A stretch of 64,000 nucleotides of DNA, from positions 1-64,000 of the forward strand of contig JAHDYR010000030.1 of the NCBI GenBank assembly GCA_019828565.1, given 5' to 3'. Below are positions 1 through 64,000 of the stretch, piece after piece. The stretch is from Carpediemonas membranifera BICM (lineage: Eukaryota; Protista; Fornicata). The stretch's first letter is position 1. Each line of letters starts with the position of its first letter. The position numbers and the translations under genes were made by a program. The notes under the pieces were generated by a model. The model saw only the letters and a program-made list of their open reading frames with translations, searched no databases and was not told where the DNA came from.

Positions 1-89
1 GACATTGTTAGGGTGAGATTAAACCCTGATTGCCAGCACCTTTATCGACGTGACGACGACGACGACGACGACGACGGACGACGACGACG

Positions 90-546
90 ACCTTTTACCC
101 ATCTTTATCTTAACATCTTTTACCCATCTTTACTCCATCTTTACCTTTTACCTTACCTTACCTTACCTTCTTACCTTACCTTACCTTACCTTACCCATCT
201 TTTACCTTTACCTTTTACCTTACCTTTACCTTTACCCTACCTTTACCTTTTACCCTTTTTACCTTTACTCCATCTTTACCTTACCTTTACCTTACCTTAC
301 CTTACCTTACCTTACCTTACCTTACCTTACCTTACCTTACCTTACCTTACCTTACCTTACCTTACCTTACCTTACCTTACCTTACCTTACCTTACCTTAC
401 CTTACCTTACCTTACCTTACCTTACCTTACCTTACCTTACCTTACCTTACCTTACCTTACCTTACCTTACCTTACCTTTTACCTTTACCTTTACCTTTTA
501 CCTTTTACCTTTACTCCATCTTTTACCTTTTACCTTTTTACCTTAC
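90..546 (+). repeat. Telomeric repeat tract (CCTTA)n, G-strand (TAAGG)n
   Basis: Perfect CCTTA array at about 287-477 with degenerate CCTTTA/CCTTTTA flanks, at the window start with the C-rich strand 5'. The same unit recurs at internal junctions. Confidence 0.9.
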
Positions 547-594
547 AGGTTTGGACCCTCCCAGGGATATTGGTAGATATTAATACTGACTACA
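547..594 (-). mobile_element. Telomere-capped remnant (48 of 84 bp) of the LTR of Gypsy family 1
   Basis: Identical to the right-hand 48 bp of the LTRs at 21529-21612 and 27480-27563, and followed by the same CCAG and 421-bp repeat flank as at 27564. Confidence 0.92.
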
Positions 595-44031: not shown

Positions 44032-44073
44032 ATCGTTTGTTCCTCGAGGATACAGCTTCGATGTTGAGAAGTT

Positions 44074-47000
44074 TTACAGACCGTCACGCTTGGCTTGGTC
44101 AGACTTCAAATATGTATCGAGGGCTTCCAAATCTTTGACGTGCGAATAAGGTTCGAATGAAGCCTCTGAATCCTCGAATCCGACCCAGTGTACGAGGTAC
44201 TCGCGCCTTGACTTGGGGCCCGAGCCTCTAGAGCGTGAGATGCGCTCGACATGCCACTCATCGACGGAAGCGGCTGCGAGGTCATAGATCTGTTGCTCCG
44301 AGAGCTTGCCTGGGTCAAATCTTCGCACACGTGCCGCGTCTACCTTGATAGTTGGACCGTCCGCTGACTGACTGAGGTCTTGTACCTCATATGCGACGAC
44401 AACACCATCACGTTTGACGGCTGCGACACGCCTCATGGGGCCGCGCCAGCCCGGGGCTAGCTTGCTCGGTGGTCTTGGGTAGTATTTGACCAGCACGAAA
44501 CGGCTCAATATCTCGCTTCTCGATGAGGTTGCCTTTGCGAGAGCGTCTTCGCGCATGGCTCTAATCCTTGCTTTGGCGAGTTGGATGGCGGCATCGGCTG
44601 CGGCTAGCTTCGACTGTGGCGGACCAGCCGAGGCGGCATCCGTGATATAGATCGATGACGGTATTGATAAATTGGCGCCAAACATGATCTCGGCCGGAGT
44701 CAACCGGGTCGGGATCCTGGGCATTGAGTTGACCAAGAATTGGGCGACTGGTAGGTGTGCTACCCAATCGTTATTCCTTAACTCCAGCTTCCTGGCTCTG
44801 AGGATGCGTTCGACCTCCTTGTTCGCGCGTTCGACGACACCGTTGCTCTGGGGATGGTATGCTGTCGTTATGTGGACGTCGAACCCCATCTCTTCGGAGA
44901 GGCGTTTGAACAGAGCGTTTTTGAACTCTGAGCCCCCATCCGATTGGACGACTTCGGGGCATCCGTATCGTAGAATCCAGGTGTTGACCAATGCGTTGGC
45001 TGCGTCTTTGGCTGAGGTGCTGTTGACCGGGACTAGCTCTGTCCAGCGGGAGCACATGTCGATCATTACTGTCACGTAGGACAGGCCGTTGACCGTCGGT
45101 AGCGGACCCATGGTGTCAATGGCCACACGCCGGAACGGGAGGTCTACAGCTGTATGCAGGCCGTCGGGTGTATCAACAGGAGGGCGGGCCAAGACTTGGC
45201 ACTCTGGACACGCGGTAATCACGTCGTCTACGACTTGACGGGAGACAGACAAACCGTCGGCCCTAAGTTGCTCGGTTGTCATCCGGCGAGACAGATGAGC
45301 TCCTGCTGTGAGATGAGCGCGGGATACCTGATCCCTCGACGCCTGTTGCATGGAGAATACTCGAGAGACCGTCGGCTCCACCGTTGTCCAGACCGGCGAT
45401 GTGCTGTAGGGTGAAATCTAAATCGGCGATCGAATCAGCCCACCGGCGGACCTTGGCGTTGGTGGACCGGTACATATAGAGTAGGTTCCGGTGATCCGTG
45501 AGAATAGTAAAGCTCTCCCAGCACAGGAACTTGCGCCATCGTTGTAACGCTGCCACGATAGCGTAGGCTTCTTTCTCACCGGTACACCAGCGTGACTGGA
45601 CGTCGTTGAACGCACGCGACATATAGCAAACTGGTCGGCCCTCTTGGAGTAAGACTGCTCCGTACCCGACATCGGATGCGTCAGTCATGACGGTGTGAGG
45701 CTTAGTCGCGTCGAACATGGCTAGAGCGTCGGCCGAACATAAAGCTTGTTTCAGATCGTCCAGCGACTTCTGAAGAACGTCTCGAGGGGGTCTGCCGACC
45801 GGACATGGCGTCTAGCAGAGGCTTAGCTCGGACCGCGAAGTTGGGTATGTAATCGCGGAAATAGTTGAGGAATCCGTTGAGACCCTGCATGCCCTTCGTG
45901 GATGAAGACAGCTTGAGGTTCGCGATATCTTCGGTCCGCTGGGGTGAGATCTTCACGCTGCCTTGGGATATGATCCACCCGAGGAACTCGACCTCTTGCC
46001 GACCGAACTGGCACTTATCTCGGCCGAGCTGAAGGTTAAGCTTGTCAACGCGTTGCATGACTTTTTCGAGGTTTCCCAGGTACTCGTCCTCATCCGCACC
46101 CATGACGATGATGTCATCAATGTATATGACACAGGCGGAGCCCACCAGACCCTTGAACCCGTCTTCCATCGCCCTCTGGAAGTACGCTCCGGCGTTACGT
46201 AAGCCGAAGGGCATCCGTGTATATTGGTATTGACCAAAAACAGTACGGAAGGCGGTTAGGTGACGGCACCGTTCAGTAAGAGGGATCTGATGGTATCCTG
46301 CTGACAAGTCTAGGGTAGCGAACACAGACTTTCCGGACAGTTGAGTGAGAACTTCGTCTATGCGAGGGATGGGGTAGTCGAATGGTTCCGTTAGTTGATT
46401 GATCTCGCGGAAGTCGACGACAAAACGCGTCTTTCCCCCCTTCTTTGGAACTATGATGGTAGGGCTCGCGTATTGAGACTGGCATGCCTCGATGTAGCGC
46501 TTTGCCAGGAGCGTATTAATGTGCTCTTGAATGATCGGGACTTTCGGCGGGGGAACATAGTACGGCCGAATGTGTACGACTCTGTCGCCCTTGAGGACCA
46601 AATCATACGGTTCGAGCCGGCTTGGCTCGGTACGGTCCACGAATGTCCGGGCGTAACGCTTGAGGATGTCGGCCTGCCTCTGAGAAAAGGGAAGAGGACA
46701 TGGCTCTGGCTTGCGCGACGTACTTCTCGAATGTAGGTGGTTCGTCGCTGGCTGCGAGCTCGCTGGTAGGCTCAGACAACGAAGGGAGAAGGCCGATCTC
46801 CACCATCTGAGGGTAACCCAGGCATACATCGAAAGCGGTCGACAGGACGTAGGCCTTAATAGTGATAGAGCATCCGCGCGGAGTGAATGGCGAGGGCGCT
46901 AAGACGAGGCGGAAGGATACCTGACCCTCGGCCTCTCTGACGCCGCCCACTGTCTCGATAAGTGTCTTCTCGTGTGAGATCCACTTCACTGCCTTGCCGT

Positions 47001-48009
47001 AGCAGAGCTTGGGGTCAATGGTTGCGCAGTCAGCGCCCGAGTCGAACAGGACGGACACGACTTGCTTAAGAATGCTAGCCTTGACGGTGGGAAGGACACT
47101 CTGACGGGAACCGAGAGAAAACACACAACGAGCTGAATTTACCTCAGAACGGCAGAATTCAGCTCGGTGGCCCGGCTTCTGGCACTTGGAACAGGTTGTC
47201 TTCGGAGCAGGGCATCGGCGAGCGGAGTGACCGACCTTACCGCAGTTGAAGCACACGAATGGCTTCTTCTCGTGCTTGGGCTTGTCGATCGGCTTGCCTT
47301 TTGAGGGGGCTACGTTCGTGCGGTCAGGCTCGCGTCGATGAGGGTTCTTCGGACCGCTCCCCGTGTGCCGTGTATGGGAGGGCGTGGTGTTGGTACGCTG
47401 TGAGTCGGAGACCCCCGCAGCGCCGAAGGAAGCGATCATCTCCTTGGACTCCTTGAGGTCGCGTGACATGACGAGGACATCAGCCATTGCGTCCTTGAGA
47501 TCCTTGCGCTCCGTTGATTCTCTGACTCGATACATGATGCGACTGTTGTTGGGGAACTTGAAGCAGCGGCTGTACGTCTCCTTCAAGACGTCCTCGGGAT
47601 CTTCGGGTTGAACGAGCTTCAAGAGCAGATTGAATCGGCGGTTCACTCGAGCAACCTCATCAGGCTCGAAGGACTTGGCGGGGACTCGGAAGAGCTGTAG
47701 ACGCATGCTCGGGCGAGAAGGTCGAAGGGCAGCACCGAGGCGCTTGAGGACTCGTTCATCTTGGGCTGCGACACGACGTTTCTTACGGAGCTTCGCGGAG
47801 AGCAGGAGAGGAGTGTCTTCAACCTCTTCGTCGTCGTTAAGGCCTGCTAGCTCTGCTATGCTAGGCTCGATGAGGTCAATAACATCATCGCGGCCGCCTA
47901 AGGCGCGATGATCGTGGAGGTTATCCGCAAAGTCCAAAAGAGCGTCCATGGAGGACTTCTTCAGGAGAGGCGGATTCTTCTTCAGGCTTCTGTAAGTTTC
48001 CGTACCCAT
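44074..48009 (-). CDS. Gag-Pol polyprotein of Gypsy 2, split into four ORFs by frameshifts (errors or decay)
   Basis: 46603-48009 gag/CCHC/LFDSGA protease; 45702-46829 RT (YIDD); 45263-45718 RNase H (TDAS); 44074-45381 integrase plus chromodomain (EYLVHWVGF...SFEP). Confidence 0.9.
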
Positions 48010-48019
48010 ATGTTTTGGT

Positions 48020-48031
48020 AGTACTAGTACT
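48020..48031. promoter_or_regulatory. 12-bp palindrome AGTACTAGTACT at the primer-binding-site position of Gypsy 2
   Basis: Same sequence and position as in Gypsy 1 although the LTR bodies differ. Confidence 0.7.
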
Positions 48032-49099
48032 GTGGTTCAATGGGTGTTGAACTTTTACTGAGGAGAAGACTCGACACAAGGGTGTCGAGGAGAAACTCCT
48101 TGACTATTAAATATAACGTAAATCTGTGTAACTTTGGGTAGGACCCACAACAGGGGGGGCTCCGTTCGTTCCTCCGGCTTCGTTCGGCTTCGCTCCGCTC
48201 CGGGCGCTCGTCGCGTTGCTCCTCCCGCCCTCCGCTACGCTACGCCTCTCTACGCCTCCGTCACTCTCTCTGCCCCCCTGCGACCCCCCGCGGACTCCGC
48301 CCATGGCCTGTAACTCCGTCAGATCACCCCACAAATTTTTGAATCTCGGGCTGTGATTTACATATGAAAAAATAAATACCCCCATCCTCCTCAGAGCATG
48401 TAATTATGTATTGTAGTGCGCACCCGTGTTCTCTTCCATTCCATACGCGTCACTCTAGACGTATTCACTCACCATGGACACAAAAAGGCTCTATAAAAAA
48501 TTTGTTGAGGGCCTAAATCAAAAATCGGGGAAAATAACGTTCCTACACGTACGCAACATGATACAGCAGTATACTCTGTTTAGCTCCAGCATCAATCCTT
48601 GAGGCCAGTAAAACCGGTCTTTGAACGCGGTTCGCCAGATTCGGATGGATATCGTGACTCAATCACACTGCGAGAGACTTTCAAAAATTCCAAATCCAGC
48701 AGCCCGGAAGCCTCAGGCCTCGTGCTGTACTGCACAAGAAGTTAGCGATCGCGACTTTTGTCCTATAACTATTTATGCATAATTCAATGTAAAGACGACG
48801 GAGTTGAATAGAGCTTAGGGCGGCGCCTCCGAGCTGACACGCACAGCTATCCAGAGAAGCAATCCGCAGCCCTGAACGCCGTCTGTAAGCATGTGCTCTG
48901 ACCTCAAAGTCCAATTTTGAGGTCCCGTTTTTGAGCGGGAAAATTTAGTATAAAATATTTGCGTTGTCCCAGATTTCAATGCATGTTCGAAGGACCCCTG
49001 GGGTAGGCTACACGCTGCATGTGTCGCCTTCCCTGGCAGGGGCCCAGGGGTCCCGTACCGGGACCCCCCAAAATCCGCAATACCTTACCATAACTTACA

Positions 49100-52064
49100 G
49101 AGGCCTCCAGCATCTCGCCTGTGGGCCCCGATCCCGAGGCCAACTGGATCGGGCACCGCATCGTTGACCACACCAACGCTTCATTCCCGCAGCGGATCAC
49201 ATACAATGGCGCTGAGGCCACCATGCGGCGGCTTACAACCAAGAAGAAGCCTTGGCAACACACCATCCGGCTCTACTCCAAGCATGACGGCGGCACCATC
49301 GCCTTTTGCCGGCGATGCCAGCGTATCTTGCTGGACACTGGGACTCACGGCCAAACCGTCCCACTCAGGCATCTCCACGGGGCCCAGCACCTAGCTAACG
49401 AACACAACACCGAGGCCACCCCAGCCTACTCGGCGTTTATTCACGAGTACGTCCACAAGCACGTGAAGGGCGAAGACCTGGCCCGCTTGCAGGAGCGCGT
49501 GGCCCAAAAGCGCTCTCAGCAACGCCCCGCAGATGCTGAGCCGGAGTCCCCCGCCCCCAGCTCGGCCCCGAGAATCAAGGCTCCGCCTAACCTCCTTCAT
49601 TCCAGACAAGTCCGGAGTAAGGAGCAGGAGCTCCTCCGTACCATCATCGGCCTGTCATCTGCCCCTGCCCCGGAGTGGCAAGGCACGCGAACCATCTACG
49701 AACAATATGGCCGGGAGATCATCCCACGCAGTCAGAGACGCGATTCAGCAGCCCACAAGCGCTCCCAAGTGTCCAGGGCAAAGTTCTTCACTAAGCATGG
49801 TCGTATGGGCAAGGCCATGTCGGCCTTCACCGCCCCCTTCTGTGAGGACTCCGCCACTATTGCAGACGCCCAAGAGCTGCATAGCCCCGCGCCAACCGAT
49901 TCACACTTCACAGCGAACGTGCCTTCAACCGCCGATCTCCCGTGCGACCACATAACCGTCGAAGAGGTCGAGCTCGCATGCCGCCGCATAGATAAGACAA
50001 GTGCGGCAGGCCTTGATTGGTTACGCCCCCAGTGCGTCCAATCCTTGGCGAAGAAGGCTGCCGGCGCCAAGGCCCTCGCTGAGCTGCTCAACTACTGGAT
50101 TACGCAGCCCCGGGCCATCCCCGACATCTGCTTACAGGGTCGGCTGGTCCTCATTCCCAAGGAGTCCCAGCCGCGCCGCTGGCGCCCGATTGCCGTCGAG
50201 TCAGCCTTGGTGCGGCTTCTACACTACATTCTTGCCCGCCGTTGGGCCCCAAGCTTCCCTGGGCTTCTGGGCCGCAACCAATACGGCTTCAAGGCCGACG
50301 GCGCCGCCCTCGCGGCCTTTTCCATCCAGCACGCATTAGTCGCTGACCCCCTCTCGGACGCGATCTTCGTGCTAGATTGGCAGAATGCCTTCAACAGCGT
50401 GTCGGCTCAGGCCATCGAGGCCGCTCTGGACGCCTTGCCTCTCAGCCCGGCAGCCAGAGCCCTGCTCAAGCGCTCAGTGGCGCCTAACACGGTGTACTTC
50501 CGTGGTGAACCCGTCGTTGTCCACCGGGGAGTGAAGCAGGGCGACCCCCTCTCGCCTTTCCTCTTTAGTGTTGTCCTCTCTTCGGTCTTCAGGTCGGCGT
50601 CCACCGAGGCTCCCAACCTCATTGCGCAATGGGATGCCTACCTGGATGATTCCAGTATCTCCGCCCCTTCCCACGAGGGCGTGCTGAGTTTCCTGCCGGC
50701 GCTGGAGCGCCACGCTGCCAGCGCGGGCCTACACTTGAACCGCAGCAAGTGCTTCTGGCTCGGCGAGCGGGAGCTCCCGGAGTTCCCGACCCATTCCTGC
50801 CGGAAGGTCCTGGGTCACTACCTCGGCACGGACCCCGAGGCGCGAGCCCTTGCAACCATTAAGGGCATCCGCGACCGCCAGGCCGTCATCAACGACCTGT
50901 TTGAACGCCTGCCCCTGCAGGTAGCGAGCCTGTTGGCTCGCGTCTGTGTGCTCCAGGCGAGCACCTATTCCTTGAGGGCACCAGAAGAGCTGGACCCACT
51001 ACTACTGACCTGTCACGTCCGTGACCTCGAAGGCATCGACGCCGAGAAGAACTCCATTATTGCTCGTGCCTTCTGCCTATCGGACGCGACCGCTAAGTGG
51101 ATCCTCCCAGCCCCCCATCTCCAAGGGCGGCCTGGGCTTCGTCAACCTCCGGGACATTCATCACGCCGCCTCGACTGCCTTCACCGAGTTCTGGGCAGCC
51201 AGGCACCACGCCTCTCCTTCCTTCCCCCGCCAGTGTGAGCTGTTTGAGCTCCTTTGGGACGAGAAGCTGTCCGATTTCCCCCGACCCTGCGGGGAGCCCT
51301 GTGACGTCCTTTCCGATGGCGTTGCGGGCAACAGGTGGCTCCACCACTTCCCTGAGACGAGGGATACGCAGTTCTCCAACAACGAGTACCGCGAAGCAGT
51401 GTGCGCCCGTTACGCCCTTGGTAACGCCCCCGCCGGTACAACGTGCGCCAGGTGCGGTCGCAACTGTTCTCGCGAGCCGAACCACGGCGTCACCTGCCCC
51501 CATCTCGGCGGCTTTCAAGTCCCGATGCCACGATAAGATCCGCGACATCTTGTCTGAGGCTCTGCGGGCCTCCTCTCGCTTCGACACCGTCCTAGTTGAG
51601 AACACAGCCACACGTGACCCCACTGGGTACAAGTGCCACGACATTCAGGCTCAAGAGGGGGACACTCACACCGCCATCGACGTGACGGTTGTGAGTCCCC
51701 TCGCTACCCCCGCTCGCGTCGACACCCGCCTGGCCGAGAAAGCCAGACAGCACCAAGCCTCGACCTCCAAGCCACTGATATTCTTAGTGTCATCATCCGG
51801 TTCATTACACGCTGACGCTGAGGACATTCTCAGCTGGCTGCCCGTCTGGCACCGCGAACACGCAGTCGTCGCCATCCAACGCGAGCTCTTCAGCGCACAC
51901 CGCCATGTGAAGCTCCTCGCATCAGCATATCTGCGTCACACTTAAGCAGTGCCTTAAACTGCACCGTGGTCCGAACGGATTCGCGCTCTAGCGGTCCTTA
52001 CACCGCAAGTCTTCTGCCACTGACCAGTCCTTCGCTTTTCCCAGTCAGGCTCGCTCCGCTCGCC
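49100..52064 (+). mobile_element. 5'-truncated RLE-type non-LTR retrotransposon (CRE-like), copy 1
   Basis: Matches 53721-56684. Encodes RT, CCHC and RLE with two homopolymer indels, stop at 51945. Confidence 0.92.
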
Positions 52065-52255
52065 CAATAAACGTCATACGCTTCAGGAGCTGGAATTACC
52101 GCGGCTGCTGGCACCAGACTTTCCCTCCTGTAGCTCCTCGTTAAGGTTTTTAGATTGTACTCATTTCGATTGCATGACTGAAAAGCCACGCATCGATATT
52201 TCTTGTCACTACCTCGCCCTGTGGGCATTGGGTATTTGCGCGCCTGCTGCTTTCC
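52065..52255 (-). rRNA. Duplicated 18S rRNA fragment (spacer/TSD 1)
   Basis: Reverse complement contains GCAGCAGGCGCGCAAAT and GTGCCAGCAGCCGCGGTAATTCCAGCTCC. Matches 61069-61260 except for a 1-nt deletion. Confidence 0.92.
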
Positions 52256-52268
52256 CGGCTTTTTCGTC

Positions 52269-55200
52269 ATGAAGGAGCCCAGAAAGCGCAGAAGAGGTAA
52301 GGAATTACCTAAGAAACCGTCTGATCGCTCTTTTGCCGCGATTCCCGGTGCCTCACTGTCCACGTCGTCGAATCATCTAGAAGTCCCCGACAAATCCGCC
52401 GTAGACCGCCAAAGAAGCCAGAAGCGAGCACAACCTATTGCACCTAGCAGTTCTGCCGAGCCCATTCCGTCCCCGAACGCCACTACGAGTCGTCTTCACG
52501 ACGATCCCCTCCAAAAATGCGAAGAACCCCGAAAGAACCTCCGAATTCCCCAGAAGCTCCGTAACTTCGCTCCAAACAAGAACGACAGCTCTAATACAGT
52601 GGTTATTCCACCGAACGAGCGTTCTTCTTGCCGCATTCCCGGTGATCGCTCGATCAATTCCAAGAATCAGCCGTCCAACGCCACGAAGGCCCACAAGACG
52701 CAGAGACAAGCATCAATGAAGGCATTTACCGCTTCCAATGCATCAGCAAGCAATTCAGCCGCCACCGCCTCGCCTTCTCATCCCGCCGCCACTAAAGCCG
52801 CCACCACCAAGGCCGCCGCCGAGGCTGAGGGCTCCGGCCCGAAGGCCACAACTCTTGTCTATCCTGCTGGCACCACGGGCACGCCCGTAGACGCCGCCAC
52901 CAACGACACTTCCACAGCCGCTGCCACTAAGGCCGCCGCCGAGGCTGAGGGCTCCGGCCCGAAGGCCACAACTCTTGTCTATCCTGCTGGCACCACGGGC
53001 ACGCCCGTAGACGCCGCCACCAACGACACTTCCACAGCCGCTGCCACTAAGGCCGCCGCCGAGGCTGAGGGCTCCGGCCCGAAGGCCACAACTCTTGTCT
53101 ATCCTGCTGGCACCACGGGCACGCCCGTAGACGCCGCCACCAACGACACTTCCACAGCCGCTGCCACTAAGGCCGCCGCCGAGGCTGAGGGCTCCGGCCC
53201 GAAGGCCACAACTCTTGTCTATCCTGCTGGCACCACGGGCACGCCCGTAGACGCCGCCACCAACGACACTTCCACAGCCGCTGCCACTAAGGCCGCCGCC
53301 GAGGCTGAGGGCTCCGGCCCGAAGGCCACAACTCTTGTCTATCCTGCTGGCACCACGGGCACGCCCGTAGACGCCGCCACCAACGACACTTCCACAGCCG
53401 CTGCCTCTAAGGCCGCCGCCGAGGCTGAGGGCTCCGGCCCGAAGGCCACAACTCTTGTCTATCCTGCTGGCACCACGGGCACGCCCGTAGACGCCGCCAC
53501 CAACGACACTTCCACAGCCGCTGCCACTAAGGCCGCCGCCGAGGCTGAGGGCTCCGGCCCGAAGGCCACAACTCTTGTCTATCCTGCTGGCACCACGGGC
53601 ACGCCCGTAGACGCCGCCACCAACGACACTTCCACAGCCGCTGCCACTAAGGCCGCCGCCAGCCCGAAGGCCGCCAGCAACACCGAGGCCGCCGCCGGCT
53701 CGAAGGCCGCCAGCAACACCGAGGCCTCCAGCATCTCGCCTGTGGGCCCCGATCCCGAGGCCAACTGGATCGGGCACCGCATCGTTGACCACACCAACGC
53801 TTCATTCCCGCAGCGGATCACATACAATGGCGCTGAGGCCACCATGCGGCGGCTTACAACCAAGAAGAAGCCTTGGCAACACACCATCCGGCTCTACTCC
53901 AAGCATGACGGCGGCACCATCGCCTTTTGCCGGCGATGCCAGCGTATCTTGCTGGACACTGGGACTCACGGCCAAACCGTCCCACTCAGGCATCTCCACG
54001 GGGCCCAGCACCTAGCTAACGAACACAACACCGAGGCCACCCCAGCCTACTCGGCGTTTATTCACGAGTACGTCCACAAGCACGTGAAGGGCGAAGACCT
54101 GGCCCGCTTGCAGGAGCGCGTGGCCCAAAAGCGCTCTCAGCAACGCCCCGCAGATGCTGAGCCGGAGTCCCCCGCCCCCAGCTCGGCCCCGAGAATCAAG
54201 GCTCCGCCTAACCTCCTTCATTCCAGACAAGTCCGGAGTAAGGAGCAGGAGCTCCTCCGTACCATCATCGGCCTGTCATCTGCCCCTGCCCCGGAGTGGC
54301 AAGGCACGCGAACCATCTACGAACAATATGGCCGGGAGATCATCCCACGCAGTCAGAGACGCGATTCAGCAGCCCACAAGCGCTCCCAAGTGTCCAGGGC
54401 AAAGTTCTTCACTAAGCATGGTCGTATGGGCAAGGCCATGTCGGCCTTCACCGCCCCCTTCTGTGAGGACTCCGCCACTATTGCAGACGCCCAAGAGCTG
54501 CATAGCCCCGCGCCAACCGATTCACACTTCACAGCGAACGTGCCTTCAACCGCCGATCTCCCGTGCGACCACATAACCGTCGAAGAGGTCGAGCTCGCAT
54601 GCCGCCGCATAGATAAGACAAGTGCGGCAGGCCTTGATTGGTTACGCCCCCAGTGCGTCCAATCCTTGGCGAAGAAGGCTGCCGGCGCCAAGGCCCTCGC
54701 TGAGCTGCTCAACTACTGGATTACGCAGCCCCGGGCCATCCCCGACATCTGCTTACAGGGTCGGCTGGTCCTCATTCCCAAGGAGTCCCAGCCGCGCCGC
54801 TGGCGCCCGATTGCCGTCGAGTCAGCCTTGGTGCGGCTTCTACACTACATTCTTGCCCGCCGTTGGGCCCCAAGCTTCCCTGGGCTTCTGGGCCGCAACC
54901 AATACGGCTTCAAGGCCGACGGCGCCGCCCTCGCGGCCTTTTCCATCCAGCACGCATTAGTCGCTGACCCCCTCTCGGACGCGATCTTCGTGCTAGATTG
55001 GCAGAATGCCTTCAACAGCGTGTCGGCTCAGGCCATCGAGGCCGCTCTGGACGCCTTGCCTCTCAGCCCGGCAGCCAGAGCCCTGCTCAAGCGCTCAGTG
55101 GCGCCTAACACGGTGTACTTCCGTGGTGAACCCGTCGTTGTCCACCGGGGAGTGAAGCAGGGCGACCCCCTCTCGCCTTTCCTCTTTAGTGTTGTCCTCT

Positions 55201-56565
55201 CTTCGGTCTTCAGGTCGGCGTCCACCGAGGCTCCCAACCTCATTGCGCAATGGGATGCCTACCTGGATGATTCCAGTATCTCCGCCCCTTCCCACGAGGG
55301 CGTGCTGAGTTTCCTGCCGGCGCTGGAGCGCCACGCTGCCAGCGCGGGCCTACACTTGAACCGCAGCAAGTGCTTCTGGCTCGGCGAGCGGGAGCTCCCG
55401 GAGTTCCCGACCCATTCCTGCCGGAAGGTCCTGGGTCACTACCTCGGCACGGACCCCGAGGCGCGAGCCCTTGCAACCATTAAGGGCATCCGCGACCGCC
55501 AGGCCGTCATCAACGACCTGTTTGAACGCCTGCCCCTGCAGGTAGCGAGCCTGTTGGCTCGCGTCTGTGTGCTCCAGGCGAGCACCTATTCCTTGAGGGC
55601 ACCAGAAGAGCTGGACCCACTACTACTGACCTGTCACGTCCGTGACCTCGAAGGCATCGACGCCGAGAAGAACTCCATTATTGCTCGTGCCTTCTGCCTA
55701 TCGGACGCGACCGCTAAGTGGATCCTCCCAGCCCCCATCTCCAAGGGCGGCCTGGGCTTCGTCAACCTCCGGGACATTCATCACGCCGCCTCGACTGCCT
55801 TCACCGAGTTCTGGGCAGCCAGGCACCACGCCTCTCCTTCCTTCCCCCGCCAGTGTGAGCTGTTTGAGCTCCTTTGGGACGAGAAGCTGTCCGATTTCCC
55901 CCCGACCCTGCGGGGAGCCCTGTGACGTCCTTTCCGATGGCGTTGCGGGCAACAGGTGGCTCCACCACTTCCCTGAGACGAGGGATACGCAGTTCTCCAA
56001 CAACGAGTACCGCGAAGCAGTGTGCGCCCGTTACGCCCTTGGTAACGCCCCCGCCGGTACAACGTGCGCCAGGTGCGGTCGCAACTGTTCTCGCGAGCCG
56101 AACCACGGCGTCACCTGCCCCCATCTCGGCGGCTTCAAGTCCCGATGCCACGATAAGATCCGCGACATCTTGTCTGAGGCTCTGCGGGCCTCCTCTCGCT
56201 TCGACACCGTCCTAGTTGAGAACACAGCCACACGTGACCCCACTGGGTACAAGTGCCACGACATTCAGGCTCAAGAGGGGGACACTCACACCGCCATCGA
56301 CGTGACGGTTGTGAGTCCCCTCGCTACCCCCGCTCGCGTCGACACCCGCCTGGCCGAGAAAGCCAGACAGCACCAAGCCTCGACCTCCAAGCCACTGATA
56401 TTCTTAGTGTCATCATCCGGTTCATTACACGCTGACGCTGAGGACATTCTCAGCTGGCTGCCCGTCTGGCACCGCGAACACGCAGTCGTCGCCATCCAAC
56501 GCGAGCTCTTCAGCGCACACCGCCATGTGAAGCTCCTCGCATCAGCATATCTGCGTCACACTTAA
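52269..56565 (+). CDS. Non-LTR polyprotein of ~1430 aa: repeat region, C2H2 finger, RT, CCHC, restriction-like endonuclease (one C-run frameshift near 55900)
   Basis: CRRC...HLHGAQH; LIPK...RPIAV; LDWQNAFNSV; GVKQGDPLSP; AYLDD; KGGLG; CARC...HGVTC; RCHD...HDI...IDVTV...EK. The first ATG after the 18S junction is at 52269. Confidence 0.9.
52809..53660 (+). repeat. In-frame 120-bp (40-aa) tandem repeat, 7 copies
   Basis: KAAAEAEGSGPKATTLVYPAGTTGTPVDAATNDTSTAAAT x7. Only 5 copies at about 57430-58041. Confidence 0.97.
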
Positions 56566-56684
56566 GCAGTGCCTTAAACTGCACCGTGGTCCGAACGGAT
56601 TCGCGCTCTAGCGGTCCTTACACCGCAAGTCTTCTGCCACTGACCAGTCCTTCGCTTTTCCCAGTCAGGCTCGCTCCGCTCGCC

Positions 56685-56876
56685 CAATAAACGTCATACG
56701 CTTCAGGAGCTGGAATTACCGCGGCTGCTGGCACCAGACTTTCCCTCCTGTAGCTCCTCGTTAAGGTTTTTAGATTGTACTCATTTCGATTGCATGACTG
56801 AAAAGCCACGCATCGATATTTCTTGTCACTACCTCGCCCTGTGGGCATTGGGTAATTTGCGCGCCTGCTGCTTTCC
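56685..56876 (-). rRNA. Duplicated 18S rRNA fragment (spacer/TSD 2), 192 bp
   Basis: Matches 61069-61260. Confidence 0.92.
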
Positions 56877-59800
56877 CGGCTTTTTCGTCATGAAGGAGCC
56901 CAGAAAGCGCAGAAGAGGTAAGGAATTACCTAAGAAACCGTCTGATCGCTCTTTTGCCGCGATTCCCGGTGCCTCACTGTCCACGTCGTCGAATCATCTA
57001 GAAGTCCCCGACAAATCCGCCGTAGACCGCCAAAGAAGCCAGAAGCGAGCACAACCTATTGCACCTAGCAGTTCTGCCGAGCCCATTCCGTCCCCGAACG
57101 CCACTACGAGTCGTCTTCACGACGATCCCCTCCAAAAATGCGAAGAACCCCGAAAGAACCTCCGAATTCCCCAGAAGCTCCGTAACTTCGCTCCAAACAA
57201 GAACGACAGCTCTAATACAGTGGTTATTCCACCGAACGAGCGTTCTTCTTGCCGCATTCCCGGTGATCGCTCGATCAATTCCAAGAATCAGCCGTCCAAC
57301 GCCACGAAGGCCCACAAGACGCAGAGACAAGCATCAATGAAGGCATTTACCGCTTCCAATGCATCAGCAAGCAATTCAGCCGCCACCGCCTCGCCTTCTC
57401 ATCCCGCCGCCACTAAAGCCGCCACCACCAAGGCCGCCGCCGAGGCTGAGGGCTCCGGCCCGAAGGCCACAACTCTTGTCTATCCTGCTGGCACCACGGG
57501 CACGCCCGTAGACGCCGCCACCAACGACACTTCCACAGCCGCTGCCACTAAGGCCGCCGCCGAGGCTGAGGGCTCCGGCCCGAAGGCCACAACTCTTGTC
57601 TATCCTGCTGGCACCACGGGCACGCCCGTAGACGCCGCCACCAACGACACTTCCACAGCCGCTGCCACTAAGGCCGCCGCCGAGGCTGAGGGCTCCGGCC
57701 CGAAGGCCACAACTCTTGTCTATCCTGCTGGCACCACGGGCACGCCCGTAGACGCCGCCACCAACGACACTTCCACAGCCGCTGCCACTAAGGCCGCCGC
57801 CGAGGCTGAGGGCTCCGGCCCGAAGGCCACAACTCTTGTCTATCCTGCTGGCACCACGGGCACGCCCGTAGACGCCGCCACCAACGACACTTCCACAGCC
57901 GCTGCCACTAAGGCCGCCGCCGAGGCTGAGGGGCTCCGGCCCGAAGGCCACAACTCTTGTCTATCCTGCTGGCACCACGGGCACGCCCGTAGACGCCGCC
58001 ACCAACGACACTTCCACAGCCGCTGCCACTAAGGCCGCCGCCAGCCCGAAGGCCGCCAGCAACACCGAGGCCGCCGCCGGCTCGAAGGCCGCCAGCAACA
58101 CCGAGGCCTCCAGCATCTCGCCTGTGGGCCCCGATCCCGAGGCCAACTGGATCGGGCACCGCATCGTTGACCACACCAACGCTTCATTCCCGTAGCGGAT
58201 CACATACAATGGCGCTGAGGCCACCATGCGGCGGCTTACAACCAAGAAGAAGCCTTGGCAACACACCATCCGGCTCTACTCCAAGCATGACGGCGGCACC
58301 ATCGCCTTTTGCCGGCGATGCCAGCGTATCTTGCTGGACACTGGGACTCACGGCCAAACCGTCCCACTCAGGCATCTCCACGGGGCCCAGCACCTAGCTA
58401 ACGAACACAACACCGAGGCCACCCCAGCCTACTCGGCGTTTATTCACGAGTACGTCCACAAGCACGTGAAGGGCGAAGACCTGGCCCGCTTGCAGGAGCG
58501 CGTGGCCCAAAAGCGCTCTCAGCAACGCCCCGCAGATGCTGAGCCGGAGTCCCCCGCCCCCAGCTCGGCCCCCGAGAATCAAGGCTCCGCCTAACCTCCT
58601 TCATTCCAGACAAGTCCGGAGTAAGGAGCAGGAGCTCCTCCGTACCATCATCGGCCTGTCATCTGCCCCCTGCCCCGGAGTGGCAAGGCACGCGAACCAT
58701 CTACGAACAATATGGCCGGGAGATCATCCCACGCAGTCAGAGACGCGATTCAGCAGCCCACAAGCGCTCCCAAGTGTCCAGGGCAAAGTTCTTCACTAAG
58801 CATGGTCGTATGGGCAAGGCCATGTCGGCCTTCACCGCCCCCTTCTGTGAGGACTCCGCCACTATTGCAGACGCCCAAGAGCTGCATAGCCCCGCGCCAA
58901 CCGATTCACACTTCACAGCGAACGTGCCTTCAACCGCCGATCTCCCGTGCGACCACATAACCGTCGAAGAGGTCGAGCTCGCATGCCGCCGCATAGATAA
59001 GACAAGTGCGGCAGGCCTTGATTGGTTACGCCCCCAGTGCGTCCAATCCTTGGCGAAGAAGGCTGCCGGCGCCAAGGCCCTCGCTGAGCTGCTCAACTAC
59101 TGGATTACGCAGCCCCGGGCCATCCCCGACATCTGCTTACAGGGTCGGCTGGTCCTCATTCCCAAGGAGTCCCAGCCGCGCCGCTGGCGCCCGATTGCCG
59201 TCGAGTCAGCCTTGGTGCGGCTTCTACACTACATTCTTGCCCGCCGTTGGGCCCCAAGCTTCCCTGGGCTTCTGGGCCGCAACCAATACGGCTTCAAGGC
59301 CGACGGCGCCGCCCTCGCGGCCTTTTCCATCCAGCACGCATTAGTCGCTGACCCCCTCTCGGACGCGATCTTCGTGCTAGATTGGCAGAATGCCTTCAAC
59401 AGCGTGTCGGCTCAGGCCATCGAGGCCGCTCTGGACGCCTTGCCTCTCAGCCCGGCAGCCAGAGCCCTGCTCAAGCGCTCAGTGGCGCCTAACACGGTGT
59501 ACTTCCGTGGTGAACCCGTCGTTGTCCACCGGGGGAGTGAAGCAGGGCGACCCCCTCTCGCCTTTCCTCTTTAGTGTTGTCCTCTCTTCGGTCTTCAGGT
59601 CGGCGTCCACCGAGGCTCCCAACCTCATTGCGCAATGGGATGCCTACCTGGATGATTCCAGTATCTCCGCCCCTTCCCACGAGGGCGTGCTGAGTTTCCT
59701 GCCGGCGCTGGAGCGCCACGCTGCCAGCGCGGGCCTACACTTGAACCGCAGCAAGTGCTTCTGGCTCGGCGAGCGGGAGCTCCCGGAGTTCCCGACCCAT

Positions 59801-61068
59801 TCCTGCCGGAAGGTCCTGGGTCACTACCTCGGCACGGACCCCGAGGCGCGAGCCCTTGCAACCATTAAGGGCATCCGCGACCGCCAGGCCGTCATCAACG
59901 ACCTGTTTGAACGCCTGCCCCTGCAGGTAGCGAGCCTGTTGGCTCGCGTCTGTGTGCTCCAGGCGAGCACCTATTCCTTGAGGGCACCAGAAGAGCTGGA
60001 CCCACTACTACTGACCTGTCACGTCCGTGACCTCGAAGGCATCGACGCCGAGAAGAACTCCATTATTGCTCGTGCCTTCTGCCTATCGGACGCGACCGCT
60101 AAGTGGATCCTCCCAGCCCCCATCTCCAAGGGCGGCCTGGGCTTCGTCAACCTCCGGGACATTCATCACGCCGCCTCGACTGCCTTCACCGAGTTCTGGG
60201 CAGCCAGGCACCACGCCTCTCCTTCCTTCCCCCGCCAGTGTGAGCTGTTTGAGCTCCTTTGGGACGAGAAGCTGTCCGATTTCCCCCCCGCCCTGCGGGA
60301 GCCCTGTGACGTCCTTTCCGATGGCGTTGCGGGCAACAGGTGGCTCCACCACTTCCCTGAGACGAGGGATACGCAGTTCTCCAACAACGAGTACCGCGAA
60401 GCAGTGTGCGCCCGTTACGCCCTTGGTAACGCCCCCGCCGGTACAACGTGCGCCAGGTGCGGTCGCAACTGTTCTCGCGAGCCGAACCACGGCGTCACCT
60501 GCCCCCATCTCGGCGGCTTCAAGTCCCGATGCCACGATAAGATCCGCGACATCTTGTCTGAGGCTCTGCGGGCCTCCTCTCGCTTCGACACCGTCCTAGT
60601 TGAGAACACAGCCACACGTGACCCCACTGGGTACAAGTGCCACGACATTCAGGCTCAAGAGGGGGACACTCACACCGCCATCGACGTGACGGTTGTGAGT
60701 CCCCTCGCTACCCCCGCTCGCGTCGACACCCGCCTGGCCGAGAAAGCCAGACAGCACCAAGCCTCGACCTCCAAGCCACTGATATTCTTAGTGTCATCAT
60801 CCGGTTCATTACACGCTGACGCTGAGGACATTCTCAGCTGGCTGCCCGTCTGGCACCGCGAACACGCAGTCGTCGCCATCCAACGCGAGCTCTTCAGCGC
60901 ACACCGCCATGTGAAGCTCCTCGCATCAGCATATCTGCGTCACACTTAAGCAGTGCCTTAAACTGCACCGTGGTCCGAACGGATTCGCGCTCTAGCGGTC
61001 CTTACACCGCAAGTCTTCTGCCACTGACCAGTCCTTCGCTTTTCCCAGTCAGGCTCGCTCCGCTCGCC
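56877..61068 (+). mobile_element. Full-length RLE-type non-LTR retrotransposon (CRE-like), copy 3, probably inactive
   Basis: Same element with 5 repeats, a CAG>TAG change at 58193-58195 and several homopolymer indels. ORF end at 60949. Confidence 0.92.
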
Positions 61069-61665
61069 CAATAAACGTCATACGCTTCAGGAGCTGGAAT
61101 TACCGCGGCTGCTGGCACCAGACTTTCCCTCCTGTAGCTCCTCGTTAAGGTTTTTAGATTGTACTCATTTCGATTGCATGACTGAAAAGCCACGCATCGA
61201 TATTTCTTGTCACTACCTCGCCCTGTGGGCATTGGGTAATTTGCGCGCCTGCTGCTTTCCTTGGAAATGAAAGCTGAATCCCATGCTTTCTCTTCGGAGT
61301 CGTTCCCTAAAACCCCGTATCCGTCACAAGCTTGGTAGGCCCCGATCCTACCAACGGTACTTGATAGAGCAGAAGGTCGAGTGGCCCGTCGCCGCTCAAG
61401 GCGTGCGATCCGCTGAATTATTATGATTCACCAAACGCCCGAAGGCGGGAGGCTTAATCTAATAAGTGCCGAGGTTGCCCTCGTTTACAGCACGTATTAG
61501 CATCAGCTTTTCCGATGTTATCCACTTCGGAGTAGGGATGGCCACGGAGATTCCAACTGATTGCCCAGCTGTCCGCAGTTTCGACGTATAGAGTCTCATA
61601 CTTAGTTCACTTGCATGGCTTAATCTTTGAGACAAGCATATGACAACTGGCAGGATCAACCAGAT
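61069..61665 (-). rRNA. 5' ~600 nt of a eukaryotic 18S rRNA gene, interrupted by the non-LTR array
   Basis: Minus strand starts CTGGTTGATCCTGCCAGTTGTCATATGCTTGTCTCAAAGATTAAGCCATGCA and runs to the 530-loop-equivalent motif. Divergent, protist-like sequence. Confidence 0.95.
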
Positions 61666-64000
61666 GACGATCTGTGCCGACACTGTTTGCGAACAGCGAA
61701 TTACGACATGCACGCTGCGAAGGCCTCAAGGCCGTCCATTACGCGTGCTACGAACGTTTTCTAGCGTTTCCATCGCCGGCAAGCCGACCATGTTTCGTGA
61801 AGGTACGTTTCTCAACGTGCTGGAAGCTTCCGACGAACGATGTCCGCCGAAAACCACCCCAAGACGGTTCGCATTGAGCTTTCGCTCGGCGCTTTCCGTC
61901 CTGTTTCTTGCTAATAGCAACGCTACTAGCTAGCAATGCAACCAACCCGCGTTCAGCGCGCCCGTTTGTCGACGGTCGTCTTACGAACCATTCCTTACAG
62001 TCAGTCCGTAACTTTCGCTACGAACCTTTCCATTCGGAAAGTGGGTCTCTCAGAATTCCTTTCGGAACCCTAAGCATGAGAGAGCTTTTCGCTGTTTTTC
62101 ACTTTCGCTACTTCAGTTTACTAACTACCTCTCTCATAGGTACCAACGCGGAATTTTTGAAAACTCCAGTTTGATCGAGTACGCATGCTCACGGGGGAGC
62201 TGGGAGGTGCCCCATTGCCGATTCGGGAGCAATGTTGGGGTGAAAAAGAGGACTGTGATATTGCCGAGGCACAATTTTTAATTTAAGTGCCTTTTCCGGG
62301 CATAGTCAACGCTGGTCAAAAAAGTGACTCGGACCTCCCCCCCGTAGTTTTAGCTAGAAATGATCCTCAGGAACTCTCAGCTACCACTTCCGACTAGAAC
62401 TAGTCGAGTCGTTGCCCCCTCGGAGCGACCTAAAACTGCCATCGAGCTCAGCGGCCGGGGAAGTGCAGCCAGTGATTCGGGATTGAAACAAGCCCCGTCT
62501 AGTACATAACTACGCTTTATGGCAGTGGTAGTTGGTGGGCTGAGGTCCTTGTTGACCAAGGAAGACTGAAAAAATGTCTTTTCTTTGAATAACTCAGGCA
62601 GACCTGGAGCTGGCAACCGCTGTCTCACCCATCCTAGAGTGCTTATATAGCTCTAGTAATGGGTGCAGAGACAGCTCTATCACTTGCTTATTGGGTGAGC
62701 TGAGGTCGCTCAAAGTTGGGATCCGCGAGGTCGACCCCCCAATGAGGCTTCTTAGAACCATGCCAATTGCCGATCACACAACTACTATAGGTATAAGGAT
62801 GCATGGTAGAGTGGCTAGCCTCAGGTTTATTCCTGGCGGCCAGACTGGATGGTGCTTGCCTGTCACTTGACGCGATCAAAGATAATTAAAGAAAGCATCT
62901 GTATTGGGTGGCATGTGTACCATACGTCTTTCTATGTCCTATAGTGTTGTGTTTTGCCATTGGTTTGGCTCCAGCTCGCATCTGCCCGTCGTTGGAGATC
63001 GCTCTTGGCGGGACCAAAATCGACCTTGATCGCGACCGTGTGAACGCTGTAGACATTCTAGATGGCTTAAAGTGCCACCATCGCTCTAACTAAGCTTACT
63101 AACGGGGGTGGTGGTACTAGTTGTGTCAGCGGACACTTTGATTCAGTCAAACTGAAGTCAGCCTGGCGCTTCCAGAAATCGGTCAGTAGAGATGCCAGAC
63201 ACGAGCAAGTGCACAGATAATCCTAATACTGGCTCTAGAGCATGGATTCACTGCGTGTCCCGCGCTCCCACACCTCAAAGGTCTTGACTGGAACACGGAT
63301 TTCGACCATCTCAAAAGTGACCCGCCCAAGTGTCAGTATTCACTCAGTCCACTAACATCCCAGTGTTAGCCCAATCCAAGTCTATTGCCCCACTTTCAGC
63401 CCTCTACGACGTCCCAACTGAATTCCGAAAGTGGCTGTCCGAAGGCTCCGGGCCGCTGAACCGGGTGAAACTGACCATCGAGTTCAGGCCTGGCTCCTGG
63501 GCAAATGTACTCTATATGGCCCTAGATGGCGGCGTTATGGTCTGATCCGAGGTCTGAGGTCTGATGGAGTCAAGTCGAGTCGGTCGAAATTCACTTTTCG
63601 CCTAGAGCCGCTGGAGTGTCAGTGTGCACCCAGCCCACGTCCATCCTAGTTTTAGACGTATCTAAGGCTATTGCCCCACTTACAGTCTCTGGCTGGGTGT
63701 CATCCGAATTCAGTAGTGCCGAACTCGGTGCTCAGCGTCGCCACCGCGATCACGGCTGACACTGAGTTCAAAGCTGTTAGTGGGGCAACCGCACTCTATC
63801 CAGGCCTAGTAGCTGTAGTTACGCCAGTGGGTGCAGGCTGAGGGTGTATTGAGTCAAACTGAGTCGTCATTTTCGACGACTCCAGAAATTAAGGTTTGGA
63901 GTTTAAAAAATAAATATGGGTCAGCCATCCTGTATGAGCTTCTATTCTGATGCGATGGTGTGAGTTTCAGCCCTCTCCGACCTCTACTCGTCATGTTCGA
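61666..64000 (-). other. Probable 5' ETS / rDNA upstream spacer, non-coding
   Basis: Directly upstream of 18S with no convincing ORFs. Boundaries cannot be determined. Confidence 0.5.

What the first reader, a model, noticed from the sequence alone, without database searches (positions are those of the whole stretch)
49100..61260. 18S-specific, antisense CRE-like retrotransposon flanked by a ~192-bp target duplication
Seen: the order is element-T-element-T-element-T-rest of 18S, where T is the same 191-192 bp of 18S (GGAAAGCAGCAGGCGCG... to just past the GTGCCAGCAGCCGCGGTAA motif). The 5' and 3' junctions are identical between copies and the elements are opposite to rRNA transcription. Known: R7 and R8 target 18S, rotifer R9 inserts antisense in 28S with a 126-bp TSD, and CRE-clade elements usually target spliced-leader genes, microsatellites or telomeres. 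Inference: possibly a new rDNA target with a longer TSD than R9, or a 3' read-through of 18S carried by the RNA. The left boundary of T is uncertain by several bases without an intact 18S copy.
Basis: partly seen in the sequence, partly recalled or inferred. Interest (0 to 1): 0.8.

Follow-up and report, generated by a model that had tools for sequence, protein, structure and literature searches.

The report
Backwards jumping gene in truncated 18S
Near one chromosome end of the protist Carpediemonas membranifera, three head-to-tail copies of a previously undescribed copy-and-paste jumping gene sit backwards in a cut-off 18S ribosomal RNA gene, with the same 182 letters of 18S between copies; that spacer may be the longest insertion footprint known for this class, but this genome alone cannot prove it.

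Summary
The layout is real, with corrections. Three copies of one element lie on the + strand: E1 49100-52074 (5'-truncated), E2 52256-56694 and E3 56877-61078. They are antisense to a truncated 18S gene (61079-61666, positions 1-588). The copies are separated by exactly 18S positions 407-588. That is 182 bp (181 bp in T1), not 191-192. All junctions are identical.

The element is a non-LTR retrotransposon with a zinc finger, a reverse transcriptase (RT) and a C-terminal CCHC/restriction-like endonuclease. It evolved under purifying selection (dN/dS 0.12 against a paralog). It sits on an isolated deep branch, so "CRE-like" is neither shown nor excluded.

The 18S specificity and the target-site duplication (TSD) are not proven. 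This is the only locus in the 24-Mb assembly. No copy has uninterrupted 18S on both sides, and E1's 5' end abuts a telomere-primed repeat array. Older relatives elsewhere are not in rDNA.

A true 182-bp TSD, an 18S piece carried on the element's RNA, and DNA-level duplication all predict this same structure. I favour the TSD reading at about 0.4.

No repaired reading frame was built.

The parts
49100..52074 (+). E1: 5'-truncated copy, starting at the equivalent of E2 position 53721. It has RT and endonuclease regions, and its frame is interrupted at homopolymer runs.
52075..52255 (-). T1: 18S positions 588..407, 181 bp (one A fewer in an A run)
52256..56694 (+). E2: full-length copy, 4439 bp. 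It has a 13-nt leader, ATG at 52269, an open frame to 55925, and the endonuclease part in another frame up to the stop at 56563-56565.
52796..53660 (+). 7.2 copies of a 120-bp (40-codon) tandem repeat in the 5' third of E2. E3 has 5.2 copies at 57417-58042.
53928..53993 (+). CxxC...H...H zinc-finger motif. The paralog protein is named BED-type by UniRef.
54774..55439 (+). Reverse transcriptase domain (PF00078, E 3e-21), with YLDD at codon 998
56065..56310 (+). CCHC plus restriction-like (PD-(D/E)XK) endonuclease motifs in E2. The same motifs lie at 60449-60694 in E3 and from 51444 in E1.
56566..56694 (+). 3' UTR of 129 nt, with AATAAA at 56686. It has no poly(A), and its predicted fold is no better than shuffled sequence.
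56695..56876 (-). T2: 18S positions 588..407, 182 bp, 100% identical to the intact 18S
56877..61078 (+). E3: full-length copy, 4202 bp. The open frame 59390-60949 spans the RT C-terminal half and the endonuclease. Its upstream frame is interrupted at homopolymer runs.
61079..61666 (-). Truncated 18S rRNA gene, positions 1-588. The first 182 bp here (61079-61260) are the third copy of T.
61667..64000 (-). 5' ETS/IGS of the rDNA unit. Homology to the C23 rDNA array runs to C31:64906, followed by a flank shared with the edge of the C23 array.
48154..49099 (+). 3' part of a telomere-associated repeat unit 'U'. It ends ...CCATAACTTACA and is joined directly to the truncated 5' end of E1.

Best explanation
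E is a real member of a low-copy lineage of non-LTR retrotransposons whose ORF was kept under purifying selection. It carries a restriction-like endonuclease (RLE), so it belongs to the R2/CRE/NeSL/Genie kind of element. [quoted passage not shown]

Inferred steps:
1. The endonuclease nicks the rRNA-sense strand between 18S positions 588 and 589, and that 3' end primes cDNA synthesis.
2. The other strand is cut 182 bp away, between positions 406 and 407. Gap filling then duplicates positions 407-588 as a TSD.
3. The three-unit array arose either by re-insertion into the regenerated site or by unequal exchange between the 182-bp duplicates.
4. The distal rDNA was lost later. The break lay in or at E1, possibly from an abortive insertion, and the end was healed by telomere-primed 'U' elements.

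Shown: the element's nature, its orientation, the exact junctions, the near-identity of the copies, and the subtelomeric setting. Inferred: the two nick positions, the TSD origin of T, and the order of events.
For: - RT domain, YLDD and zinc finger.
- The CCHC...xHD...E...xHD...D spacing fits the published REL consensus. An endonuclease HMM matches at E 3.5e-44, though E's own sequence was in the seed, and it also matches 109 of 170 sequences scanned.
- dN/dS is 0.12 over 722 codons against the C27 paralog.
- All three 3' junctions are at 18S position 588, and both 5' junctions are at position 407, with no extra bases.
- The copies differ at 12 of 3164 aligned columns, mostly single-base length differences in short base runs.
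- Each of E2 and E3 has T on both sides.
- Long TSDs and tandem site-specific insertions have precedents in RLE elements. R9 has an 'exceptionally long' TSD (reference title). Utopia has a 20-bp TSD and tandem insertions. [quoted passage not shown]
- The insertion site lies about 30 nt downstream (3') of the universally conserved GTGCCAGCAGCCGCGGTAA motif.
Against: - There is only one locus in the assembly. All junctions could be copies of one event.
- No copy has uninterrupted 18S on both sides, and the seven intact 18S genes carry no insertion.
- Older family fragments on C27 and C33 are not next to rDNA.
- The element's 5'-outward orientation and the U element capping E1 would also fit a chromosome-end lifestyle.
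- rDNA pieces are joined to telomeric elements elsewhere by other routes (C46).
- Two canonical endonuclease residues are replaced: RHD becomes CHD, and K/RPD becomes CHD.
- No copy has one uninterrupted frame from the ATG through the endonuclease.
Confidence: 0.4

Rival explanations
1. T is carried on the element's RNA and is not made by staggered cuts.

Variant a: the transcript reads through the 3' end into antisense 18S as far as position 407. TPRT then starts at a nick between 406 and 407 with about 0-bp TSD, which recreates 18S 1-588 next to the element.

Variant b: the transcript starts upstream in antisense 18S, for example as read-through from the preceding unit. The homologous leader then guides joining of the 5' end to the target, as proposed for R2 co-transcripts.

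Either variant gives exactly the observed E-T-E-T-E-18S order.
For: The predicted DNA structure is identical (reasoning from the junctions). There is no poly(A) or other defined terminator at the E|T boundary, so read-through is plausible. In a head-to-tail array, every internal unit is preceded and followed by T. The reading frame stays open from inside T (52203) into the ORF.
Against: It needs a precise RNA end at position 407, or precise homology-guided joining, in every event. No ribozyme or other processing signal was found at the junctions. AATAAA lies 4 nt before the E|T boundary, which suggests that the element proper ends there. No transcript data are available.
Confidence: 0.3
2. E is not 18S-specific. 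Like GilM/GilT of Giardia, or like chromosome-healing elements, it was reverse-transcribed onto a broken or cleaved chromosome end that happened to lie in subtelomeric rDNA. The E+T unit was then multiplied by DNA-level events at an unstable chromosome end, such as unequal exchange, break-induced replication or slippage.
For: - The locus is 49-61 kb from a (CCTTA)n telomere.
- E points 5'-outward, like the U array.
- E1 was once terminal and was capped by a U element.
- C46 shows another 18S fragment (positions 1624-1277) fused to a truncated telomeric element.
- The older E-like copies are not in rDNA.
- The copies are nearly identical, including the whole 5' region.
- GilM/GilT are RLE elements found in telomeric arrays and were placed in the CRE clade.
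Against: - An intact, conserved endonuclease argues for site-specific cleavage.
- E-E junctions carry T, not telomere repeats, unlike the U junctions.
- E2 and E3 have identical complete 5' ends, with no erosion or truncation.
- An illegitimate duplication breakpoint falling 13 nt before the ATG would be a coincidence.
Confidence: 0.2
3. The tandem array is an assembly artefact, created when a long-read assembler expanded a single insertion.
For: The differences between copies are mostly homopolymer-length differences typical of long-read error. rDNA and subtelomeres are hard to assemble.
Against: E2 and E3 differ in the number of 120-bp repeats (7.2 against 5.2). E1 has a unique left junction. 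One clear substitution at 58193 distinguishes E3. Assemblers usually collapse repeats rather than expand them.
Confidence: 0.03

Closest known systems
R9 (bdelloid rotifer 28S; R2 clade) and R8 (Hydra 18S; R2 clade)
   Same: These are RLE non-LTR retrotransposons specific for rRNA genes. R9 is known for an exceptionally long TSD (126 bp from my memory of the abstract; the reference title is cited). R8 targets 18S.
   Different: E is not close to R2: it scores 21 bits against R2Bm and sits on an isolated branch. It is antisense to rRNA. No HDV-like ribozyme was found at the T2|E3 junction that was scanned, and no Myb domain was found in E2. The apparent duplication is 182 bp. The R8 and R7 insertion positions were not compared.
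CRE clade: CRE1/2, SLACS, CZAR (spliced-leader genes), MoTeR/FoTeR/Cnl1 (telomeres), and GilM/GilT, also called Genie-1, of Giardia
   Same: - The domain order is N-terminal zinc finger, RT, then C-terminal CCHC plus RLE, and the motif spacing fits the SLACS/CRE consensus quoted.
- SLACS and CZAR are strictly site-specific, with a long TSD (49 bp for SLACS, from memory).
- GilM/GilT occur in head-to-tail subtelomeric arrays in another fornicate and were placed in the CRE clade.
- Genie-1 makes tandem insertions in a chromosomal repeat.
   Different: Clade membership is untested, because no reference sequences were reachable. The target here is 18S. There is no poly(A). RHD and KPD are both replaced by CHD. 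The 5' third holds 40-codon tandem repeats.
Utopia / NeSL (U2 snRNA and spliced-leader targets)
   Same: These are RLE elements with precise 3' junctions. They occasionally occur as tandem copies separated by target fragments, and their TSD varies from 0 to 20 bp. One weak hit (P0009) is a NeSL-like nematode protein with a Ulp1 domain.
   Different: E has no Ulp1 protease, a different target, and a far longer duplicated segment.

Membership tests
Non-LTR retrotransposon with restriction-like endonuclease (RLE LINE) | Reverse transcriptase domain with a YxDD active site | tested here: met
   PF00078 at E 3e-21; YLDD at codon 998
Non-LTR retrotransposon with restriction-like endonuclease (RLE LINE) | C-terminal CCHC motif followed by PD-(D/E)XK motifs, with spacing C-x2-C-x7-8-H-x3-4-C-x9-10-RHD/N...E...R/KPD...D/E | tested here: met
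   The sequence CARC-x9-H-x3-C-x9-CHD-x21-E-x11-(K)CHD-x12-D fits the consensus quoted. It aligns with eight RLE proteins and weakly with the R2Bm endonuclease. Two canonical residues are replaced by Cys/His.
Non-LTR retrotransposon with restriction-like endonuclease (RLE LINE) | No AP-endonuclease domain, no LTRs, no integrase | tested here: met
   RVT_1 is the only Pfam family found. The only flanking direct repeat is the 18S piece.
Non-LTR retrotransposon with restriction-like endonuclease (RLE LINE) | TPRT signature: an invariant 3' junction and 5'-truncated copies | tested here: met
   There are three identical 3' junctions, and E1 is 5'-truncated. All of this comes from one locus.
CRE clade | RT phylogeny groups it with CRE1/2, SLACS, CZAR, MoTeR or GilM/GilT | not testable with these tools
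   No named reference sequences were reachable. In a tree of the 135 best RT hits, E and its paralog form an isolated branch, 3.2 substitutions per site from the nearest row.
rDNA-specific R2-clade elements (R2, R8, R9) | Inserted in the sense orientation, co-transcribed with rRNA, and released by a 5' HDV-like ribozyme | tested here: not met
   E is antisense. No ribozyme family scored up to E=1 in 56400-57500, the stretch around the T2|E3 junction.
Site-specific (18S-specific) element | Independent insertions at the same target position | tested here: inconclusive
   There are three identical junctions at one locus and no other copy in the 24-Mb assembly. Seven intact 18S genes are uninserted. 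The older fragments on C27 and C33 lack their ends and have no rDNA beside them. The metagenome junction search gave only chance 20-mers.
True target-site duplication | The same target segment on both flanks of one insertion, with the uninterrupted target continuing beyond both | tested here: inconclusive
   E2 and E3 have T on both flanks. However, each left T is bounded by another element, and the leftmost copy abuts a telomeric element.
Telomere-primed terminal-addition retroelements (HeT-A/TART, Athena, and GilM/GilT as described) | Head-to-tail arrays pointing 5'-outward, telomere repeats or variable 5' truncation at the junctions between units | tested here: not met
   The orientation and the array form fit. 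But the E-E junctions carry 182 bp of 18S and complete 5' ends, not telomere repeats. The neighbouring U array does meet this feature.

The most novel reading that the evidence does not exclude
E is a deep-branching, strictly 18S-specific RLE retrotransposon that cuts the two DNA strands 182 bp apart (588/589 and 406/407). That would be the longest target-site duplication reported for any target-primed element. It also inserts antisense, so unlike R2-type rDNA elements it cannot ride on Pol I transcription and must bring its own promoter, perhaps the 120-bp repeats. An abortive insertion may even have severed the chromosome end, which was then healed by the telomere-primed U elements.
Probability: 0.35. 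Interest if true: 0.65.

Novelty: new variant of a known kind. Interest (0 to 1): 0.45.

Why it matters
If T is a true TSD, the two strand cleavages of an RLE retrotransposon can lie about one nucleosome repeat apart (my rough comparison). This would extend the single R9 precedent and constrain models of how the two protein subunits find their sites. An antisense rDNA element would also show that rDNA can be a safe haven without Pol I co-transcription. The element also adds a new deep lineage from a free-living relative of Giardia. That is useful for the early history of RLE LINEs and their link to chromosome ends, since GilM/GilT are telomeric. If T is instead RNA-borne, or the locus is a healed break, the case becomes an ordinary low-copy LINE at an unstable subtelomere.

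Tried and rejected
- I looked for single insertions or other copies in the genome, using the 3' 400 bp, the 5' 420 bp and the protein pieces. The result was only this locus plus old fragments on C27, C33, C50 and C42, and a 30%-identical RLE fragment on C26 with no RNA gene nearby.
- I suspected that the C27 paralog was capped by a telomere-like element ending ...CCTTACAG. I rejected this: that sequence is the coding region of a truncated Ty3-like integrase on the other strand.
- A metagenome scan for the 5' junction 20-mer returned six chance matches with no further homology.
- Naming the nearest RT hits gave only 'hypothetical protein' entries or unnamed metagenome proteins.
- The ESM Atlas returned only generic RVT_1 clusters.
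- Pfam found nothing on the N-terminal and C-terminal pieces beyond noise.
- There is no ribozyme at the junctions, and the 3' UTR fold is not better than shuffles (z = -0.4).
- Arkhipova and Morrison 2001 and the SLACS and CRE2 papers are not held. The Gladyshev and Arkhipova 2009 (R9) paper was not found by search. Details of GilM/GilT arrays, the 49-bp SLACS TSD and R9's 126 bp and orientation therefore rest on memory or on secondary citations.
The pieces were searched separately.
Full report
**Where this is.** The window is C31:1-64000 of a 24.2-Mb, 69-contig assembly. The only close protein relative carries the NCBI name Carpediemonas membranifera, as earlier notes of this scan also say. 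The contig starts with a (CCTTA)n array. Long arrays of that repeat occur at only four contig positions. Three are at contig starts (C14, C31, C37). The fourth, at C24:491.5 kb on the opposite strand, would be the other end if that contig ends there. I therefore take (TAAGG)n to be the telomere repeat, and the window to be the last 64 kb of a chromosome.

**Checking the observation.**
- Rfam finds three eukaryotic SSU matches, all on the - strand: 52080-52278, 56700-56899 and 61077-61663.
- The genome has seven intact 18S genes on C23 and C26. Aligning one of them (L001) to the window fixes the boundaries to the base.
- Every element ends ...CCAATAAACGT and is followed by CATACGCTTCAGG..., which is 18S position 588 read backwards.
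- Every full 5' end, CGGCTTTTTCGTCATG..., is preceded by ...CTGCTGCTTTCC, which is 18S position 407.
- The repeated 18S piece T is therefore positions 407-588. It is 182 bp in T2 and in the gene itself, and 181 bp in T1 because of an A-run difference. It is not 191-192 bp.
- The layout is: E1 49100-52074, T1 52075-52255, E2 52256-56694, T2 56695-56876, E3 56877-61078, then 18S positions 588 down to 1 at 61079-61666, then ETS/IGS.
- The ORFs are on the + strand, so the elements are antisense to rRNA.
No 3' part of 18S and no 28S lies in the window or in the next 10 kb.

**What the element is.**
- E2 has a 13-nt leader, an ATG at 52269 and an open frame of 1218 codons.
- The frame encodes a basic low-complexity N-terminus and then 7.2 copies of a 40-codon (120-bp) repeat; E3 has 5.2 copies.
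- Next come a CxxC...H...H zinc finger (UniRef calls the paralog BED-type) and an RT domain (PF00078, E 3e-21) with YLDD.
- The C-terminal part is readable without interruption in E3 (59390-60949). Its motifs are CARC-x9-H-x3-C-x9-CHD-x21-E-x11-(K)CHD-x12-D. This fits the restriction-like endonuclease consensus quoted in PMC12857005, except that Cys/His replace the R of RHD and the P of KPD.
- This part aligns with eight RLE proteins and weakly with the R2Bm endonuclease (8gh6). An HMM of the domain matches 109 of the 170 sequences scanned, which were E's ORF-B plus the proteins returned by the searches.
- There is no APE domain, no LTR, no poly(A), no ribozyme in the stretch around the T2|E3 junction and no remarkable 3' UTR fold.
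- It is therefore an RLE-type non-LTR retrotransposon.

**State of the copies.**
- The three copies differ at 12 of 3164 aligned columns, nearly all single-base length differences in short runs of C, G, T or A, plus one substitution. The 545-bp 5' parts of E2 and E3 are identical.
- Each copy's frame is interrupted at different runs. No copy has one frame from the ATG through the endonuclease.
- These differences look like long-read errors, but real decay cannot be excluded. I built no repaired frame, and I searched the pieces separately.

**Is it a living lineage, and which clade?**
- A paralog on C27 (80034-82504, 82% nt identity, 872 open codons) gives dN/dS 0.12 and dS 0.85 over 722 codons. 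The family has therefore been kept under strong purifying selection for a long time.
- A full HMMER scan of 1.84 billion representative proteins found nothing outside this genome better than E 2e-29. Identity in the RT core was 24-37%.
- In a tree of the 135 best hits, E and its paralog form an isolated branch, 3.2 substitutions per site from any other row.
- Names for ten top hits were uninformative. No CRE, GilM or R2 reference sequences were reachable.
- 'CRE-like' therefore stays untested. PMC10088271 places Giardia's GilM/GilT in the CRE clade, which makes the idea reasonable for a fellow fornicate, but that is a lead, not a test.
- E is not R8, which lies inside the R2A clade. It is not R7 either, which is an APE-type element of the R1 clade (from my own knowledge).

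**The surroundings change the story.**
- To the right, 61079-64906 matches an rDNA unit of C23 at 98.7% (18S 1-588 plus the whole spacer). After that comes a flank shared with the outer edge of the C23 array. This is therefore the first unit of a subtelomeric rDNA array, transcribed towards the telomere and cut off at 18S position 588.
- To the left, positions 600-49099 hold a head-to-tail array of a 1.8-kb unit 'U' with 423-bp satellites. Ty3/chromovirus elements interrupt this array.
- Every U ends ...AATACCTTACCATAACTTAC(A), followed by zero to about four telomere repeats, and then by a variably 5'-truncated next unit. This is the signature of addition onto a telomeric 3' end.
- The last U, itself split by a Ty3 insertion, is joined directly to the truncated 5' end of E1. 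The E array was therefore once the chromosome terminus.

**Can 18S specificity and the TSD be shown?** Not with this assembly.
- DNA searches with the element's 3' 400 bp and 5' 420 bp find only this locus, plus an 81%-identical 106-bp fragment on C27.
- The seven intact 18S genes are uninserted.
- The older fragments on C27 and C33 lack their ends and have no 18S beside them. The apparent telomere-like cap on C27 turned out to be Ty3 integrase sequence.
- Another small contig, C46, shows 18S positions 1624-1277 fused to a truncated telomeric element. rDNA pieces and telomeric elements therefore do get joined by other routes in this genome.

**Mechanism.** Three mechanisms predict the same DNA.
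1. A true TSD. The rRNA-sense strand is nicked at 588/589 and primes cDNA synthesis. The other strand is cut at 406/407, and fill-in duplicates 407-588. Tandem units then arise by re-insertion into the regenerated site or by unequal exchange between the 182-bp repeats.
2. T is carried on the RNA. In one version, read-through to position 407 plus a nick at 406/407 with about 0-bp TSD recreates 18S 1-588. In the other, a 5' leader copied from the upstream T guides 5' joining by homology, as proposed for R2 co-transcripts (from my own knowledge of the R2 literature).
3. A single junction at a healed break in rDNA was multiplied by DNA-level events.

I favour the first (about 0.4) for these reasons:
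- The endonuclease is conserved.
- Both junctions are base-exact, with complete 5' ends 13 nt before the ATG.
- The E-E junctions carry target sequence rather than telomere repeats.
- There are precedents: R9's exceptionally long TSD (title cited), Utopia's 20-bp TSD and tandem insertions, and Genie-1's site-specific tandem insertions.

The second mechanism (about 0.3) cannot be separated from the first without RNA ends or nick mapping. The third (about 0.2) is favoured by the chromosome-end setting but needs coincidences. An assembly artefact is unlikely (0.03), because the copies differ in repeat number, in one substitution and in their flanks.

**Verdict.** This is a real and probably young array of a new, deep-branching RLE retrotransposon, lying antisense in a truncated subtelomeric 18S gene, with a 182-bp 18S spacer between copies. 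The length and the 'rest of 18S' needed correction, and the claims '18S-specific', 'CRE-like' and 'TSD' remain unproven. It is a new variant of a known kind. The interest is moderate, and would be higher if a single long read or one PCR shows 18S continuing beyond the left copy of T.

Noticed in passing
window 1-560; also the starts of C14 and C37, and C24:491.5 kb: Long (CCTTA)n arrays occur only at four contig positions: three contig starts and C24:491.5 kb on the opposite strand. The orientation fits a telomere C-strand, so the telomere repeat of this organism appears to be TAAGG.
   Followed up: partly
window 600-49099 (junctions near 7683, 9179, 12278, 14027, 17927, 21397, 30020, 49098): A head-to-tail array of a 1.8-kb unit with 423-bp satellites. 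Each unit ends in a telomere-like tail, followed by 0 to about 4 CCTTA repeats and then a variably 5'-truncated next unit. This is the signature of telomere-primed additions of an element without an RT. Which RT copies it is unknown. E's 3' UTR gave no BLAST match to it.
   Followed up: partly
L053 (C46:1-2900): The 12.7-kb contig C46 starts with 18S positions 1624 down to 1277 (antisense). This is fused directly to a 5'-truncated copy (91% identical) of the element found at window 9215-11031. It is a second rDNA-to-telomeric-element joint at a different 18S position, or else a chimeric contig.
   Followed up: partly
window 42209-48152: A 5.9-kb Ty3/chromovirus with unusually short 122-bp LTRs (42209-42330 and 48031-48152) splits a U unit. 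The U coordinates on its two sides overlap by 4 bp, which fits a 4-bp duplication.
   Followed up: partly
window 61079-64000 and L019 (C31:64001-65674), compared with C23:52760-57597: The truncated rDNA unit on C31 and the outermost unit of the six-unit C23 array share the spacer (98.7%) and about 770 bp of flank beyond it (96%). Two chromosome ends therefore appear to carry paralogous rDNA-array edges.
   Followed up: partly
C33:85531-88483 (protein P0002): The annotated gene J8273_5837 is a chimera. Residues 76-364 are an E-like zinc-finger region (78% identical). Residues 367-776 belong to a different family, with a dozen or more copies at 79-91% identity across the genome and many more distant ones.
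   Followed up: partly
window 12279-12300: One U junction continues with GGTTCGAATCC..., which looks like the T-arm and 3' end of a tRNA.
   Followed up: no
C27:82504 and C27:95703: Two pieces of E-like sequence about 13 kb apart overlap by about 220 bp of element coordinates (55939-56161). They are either two different old copies or a large duplication around an insert.
   Followed up: no
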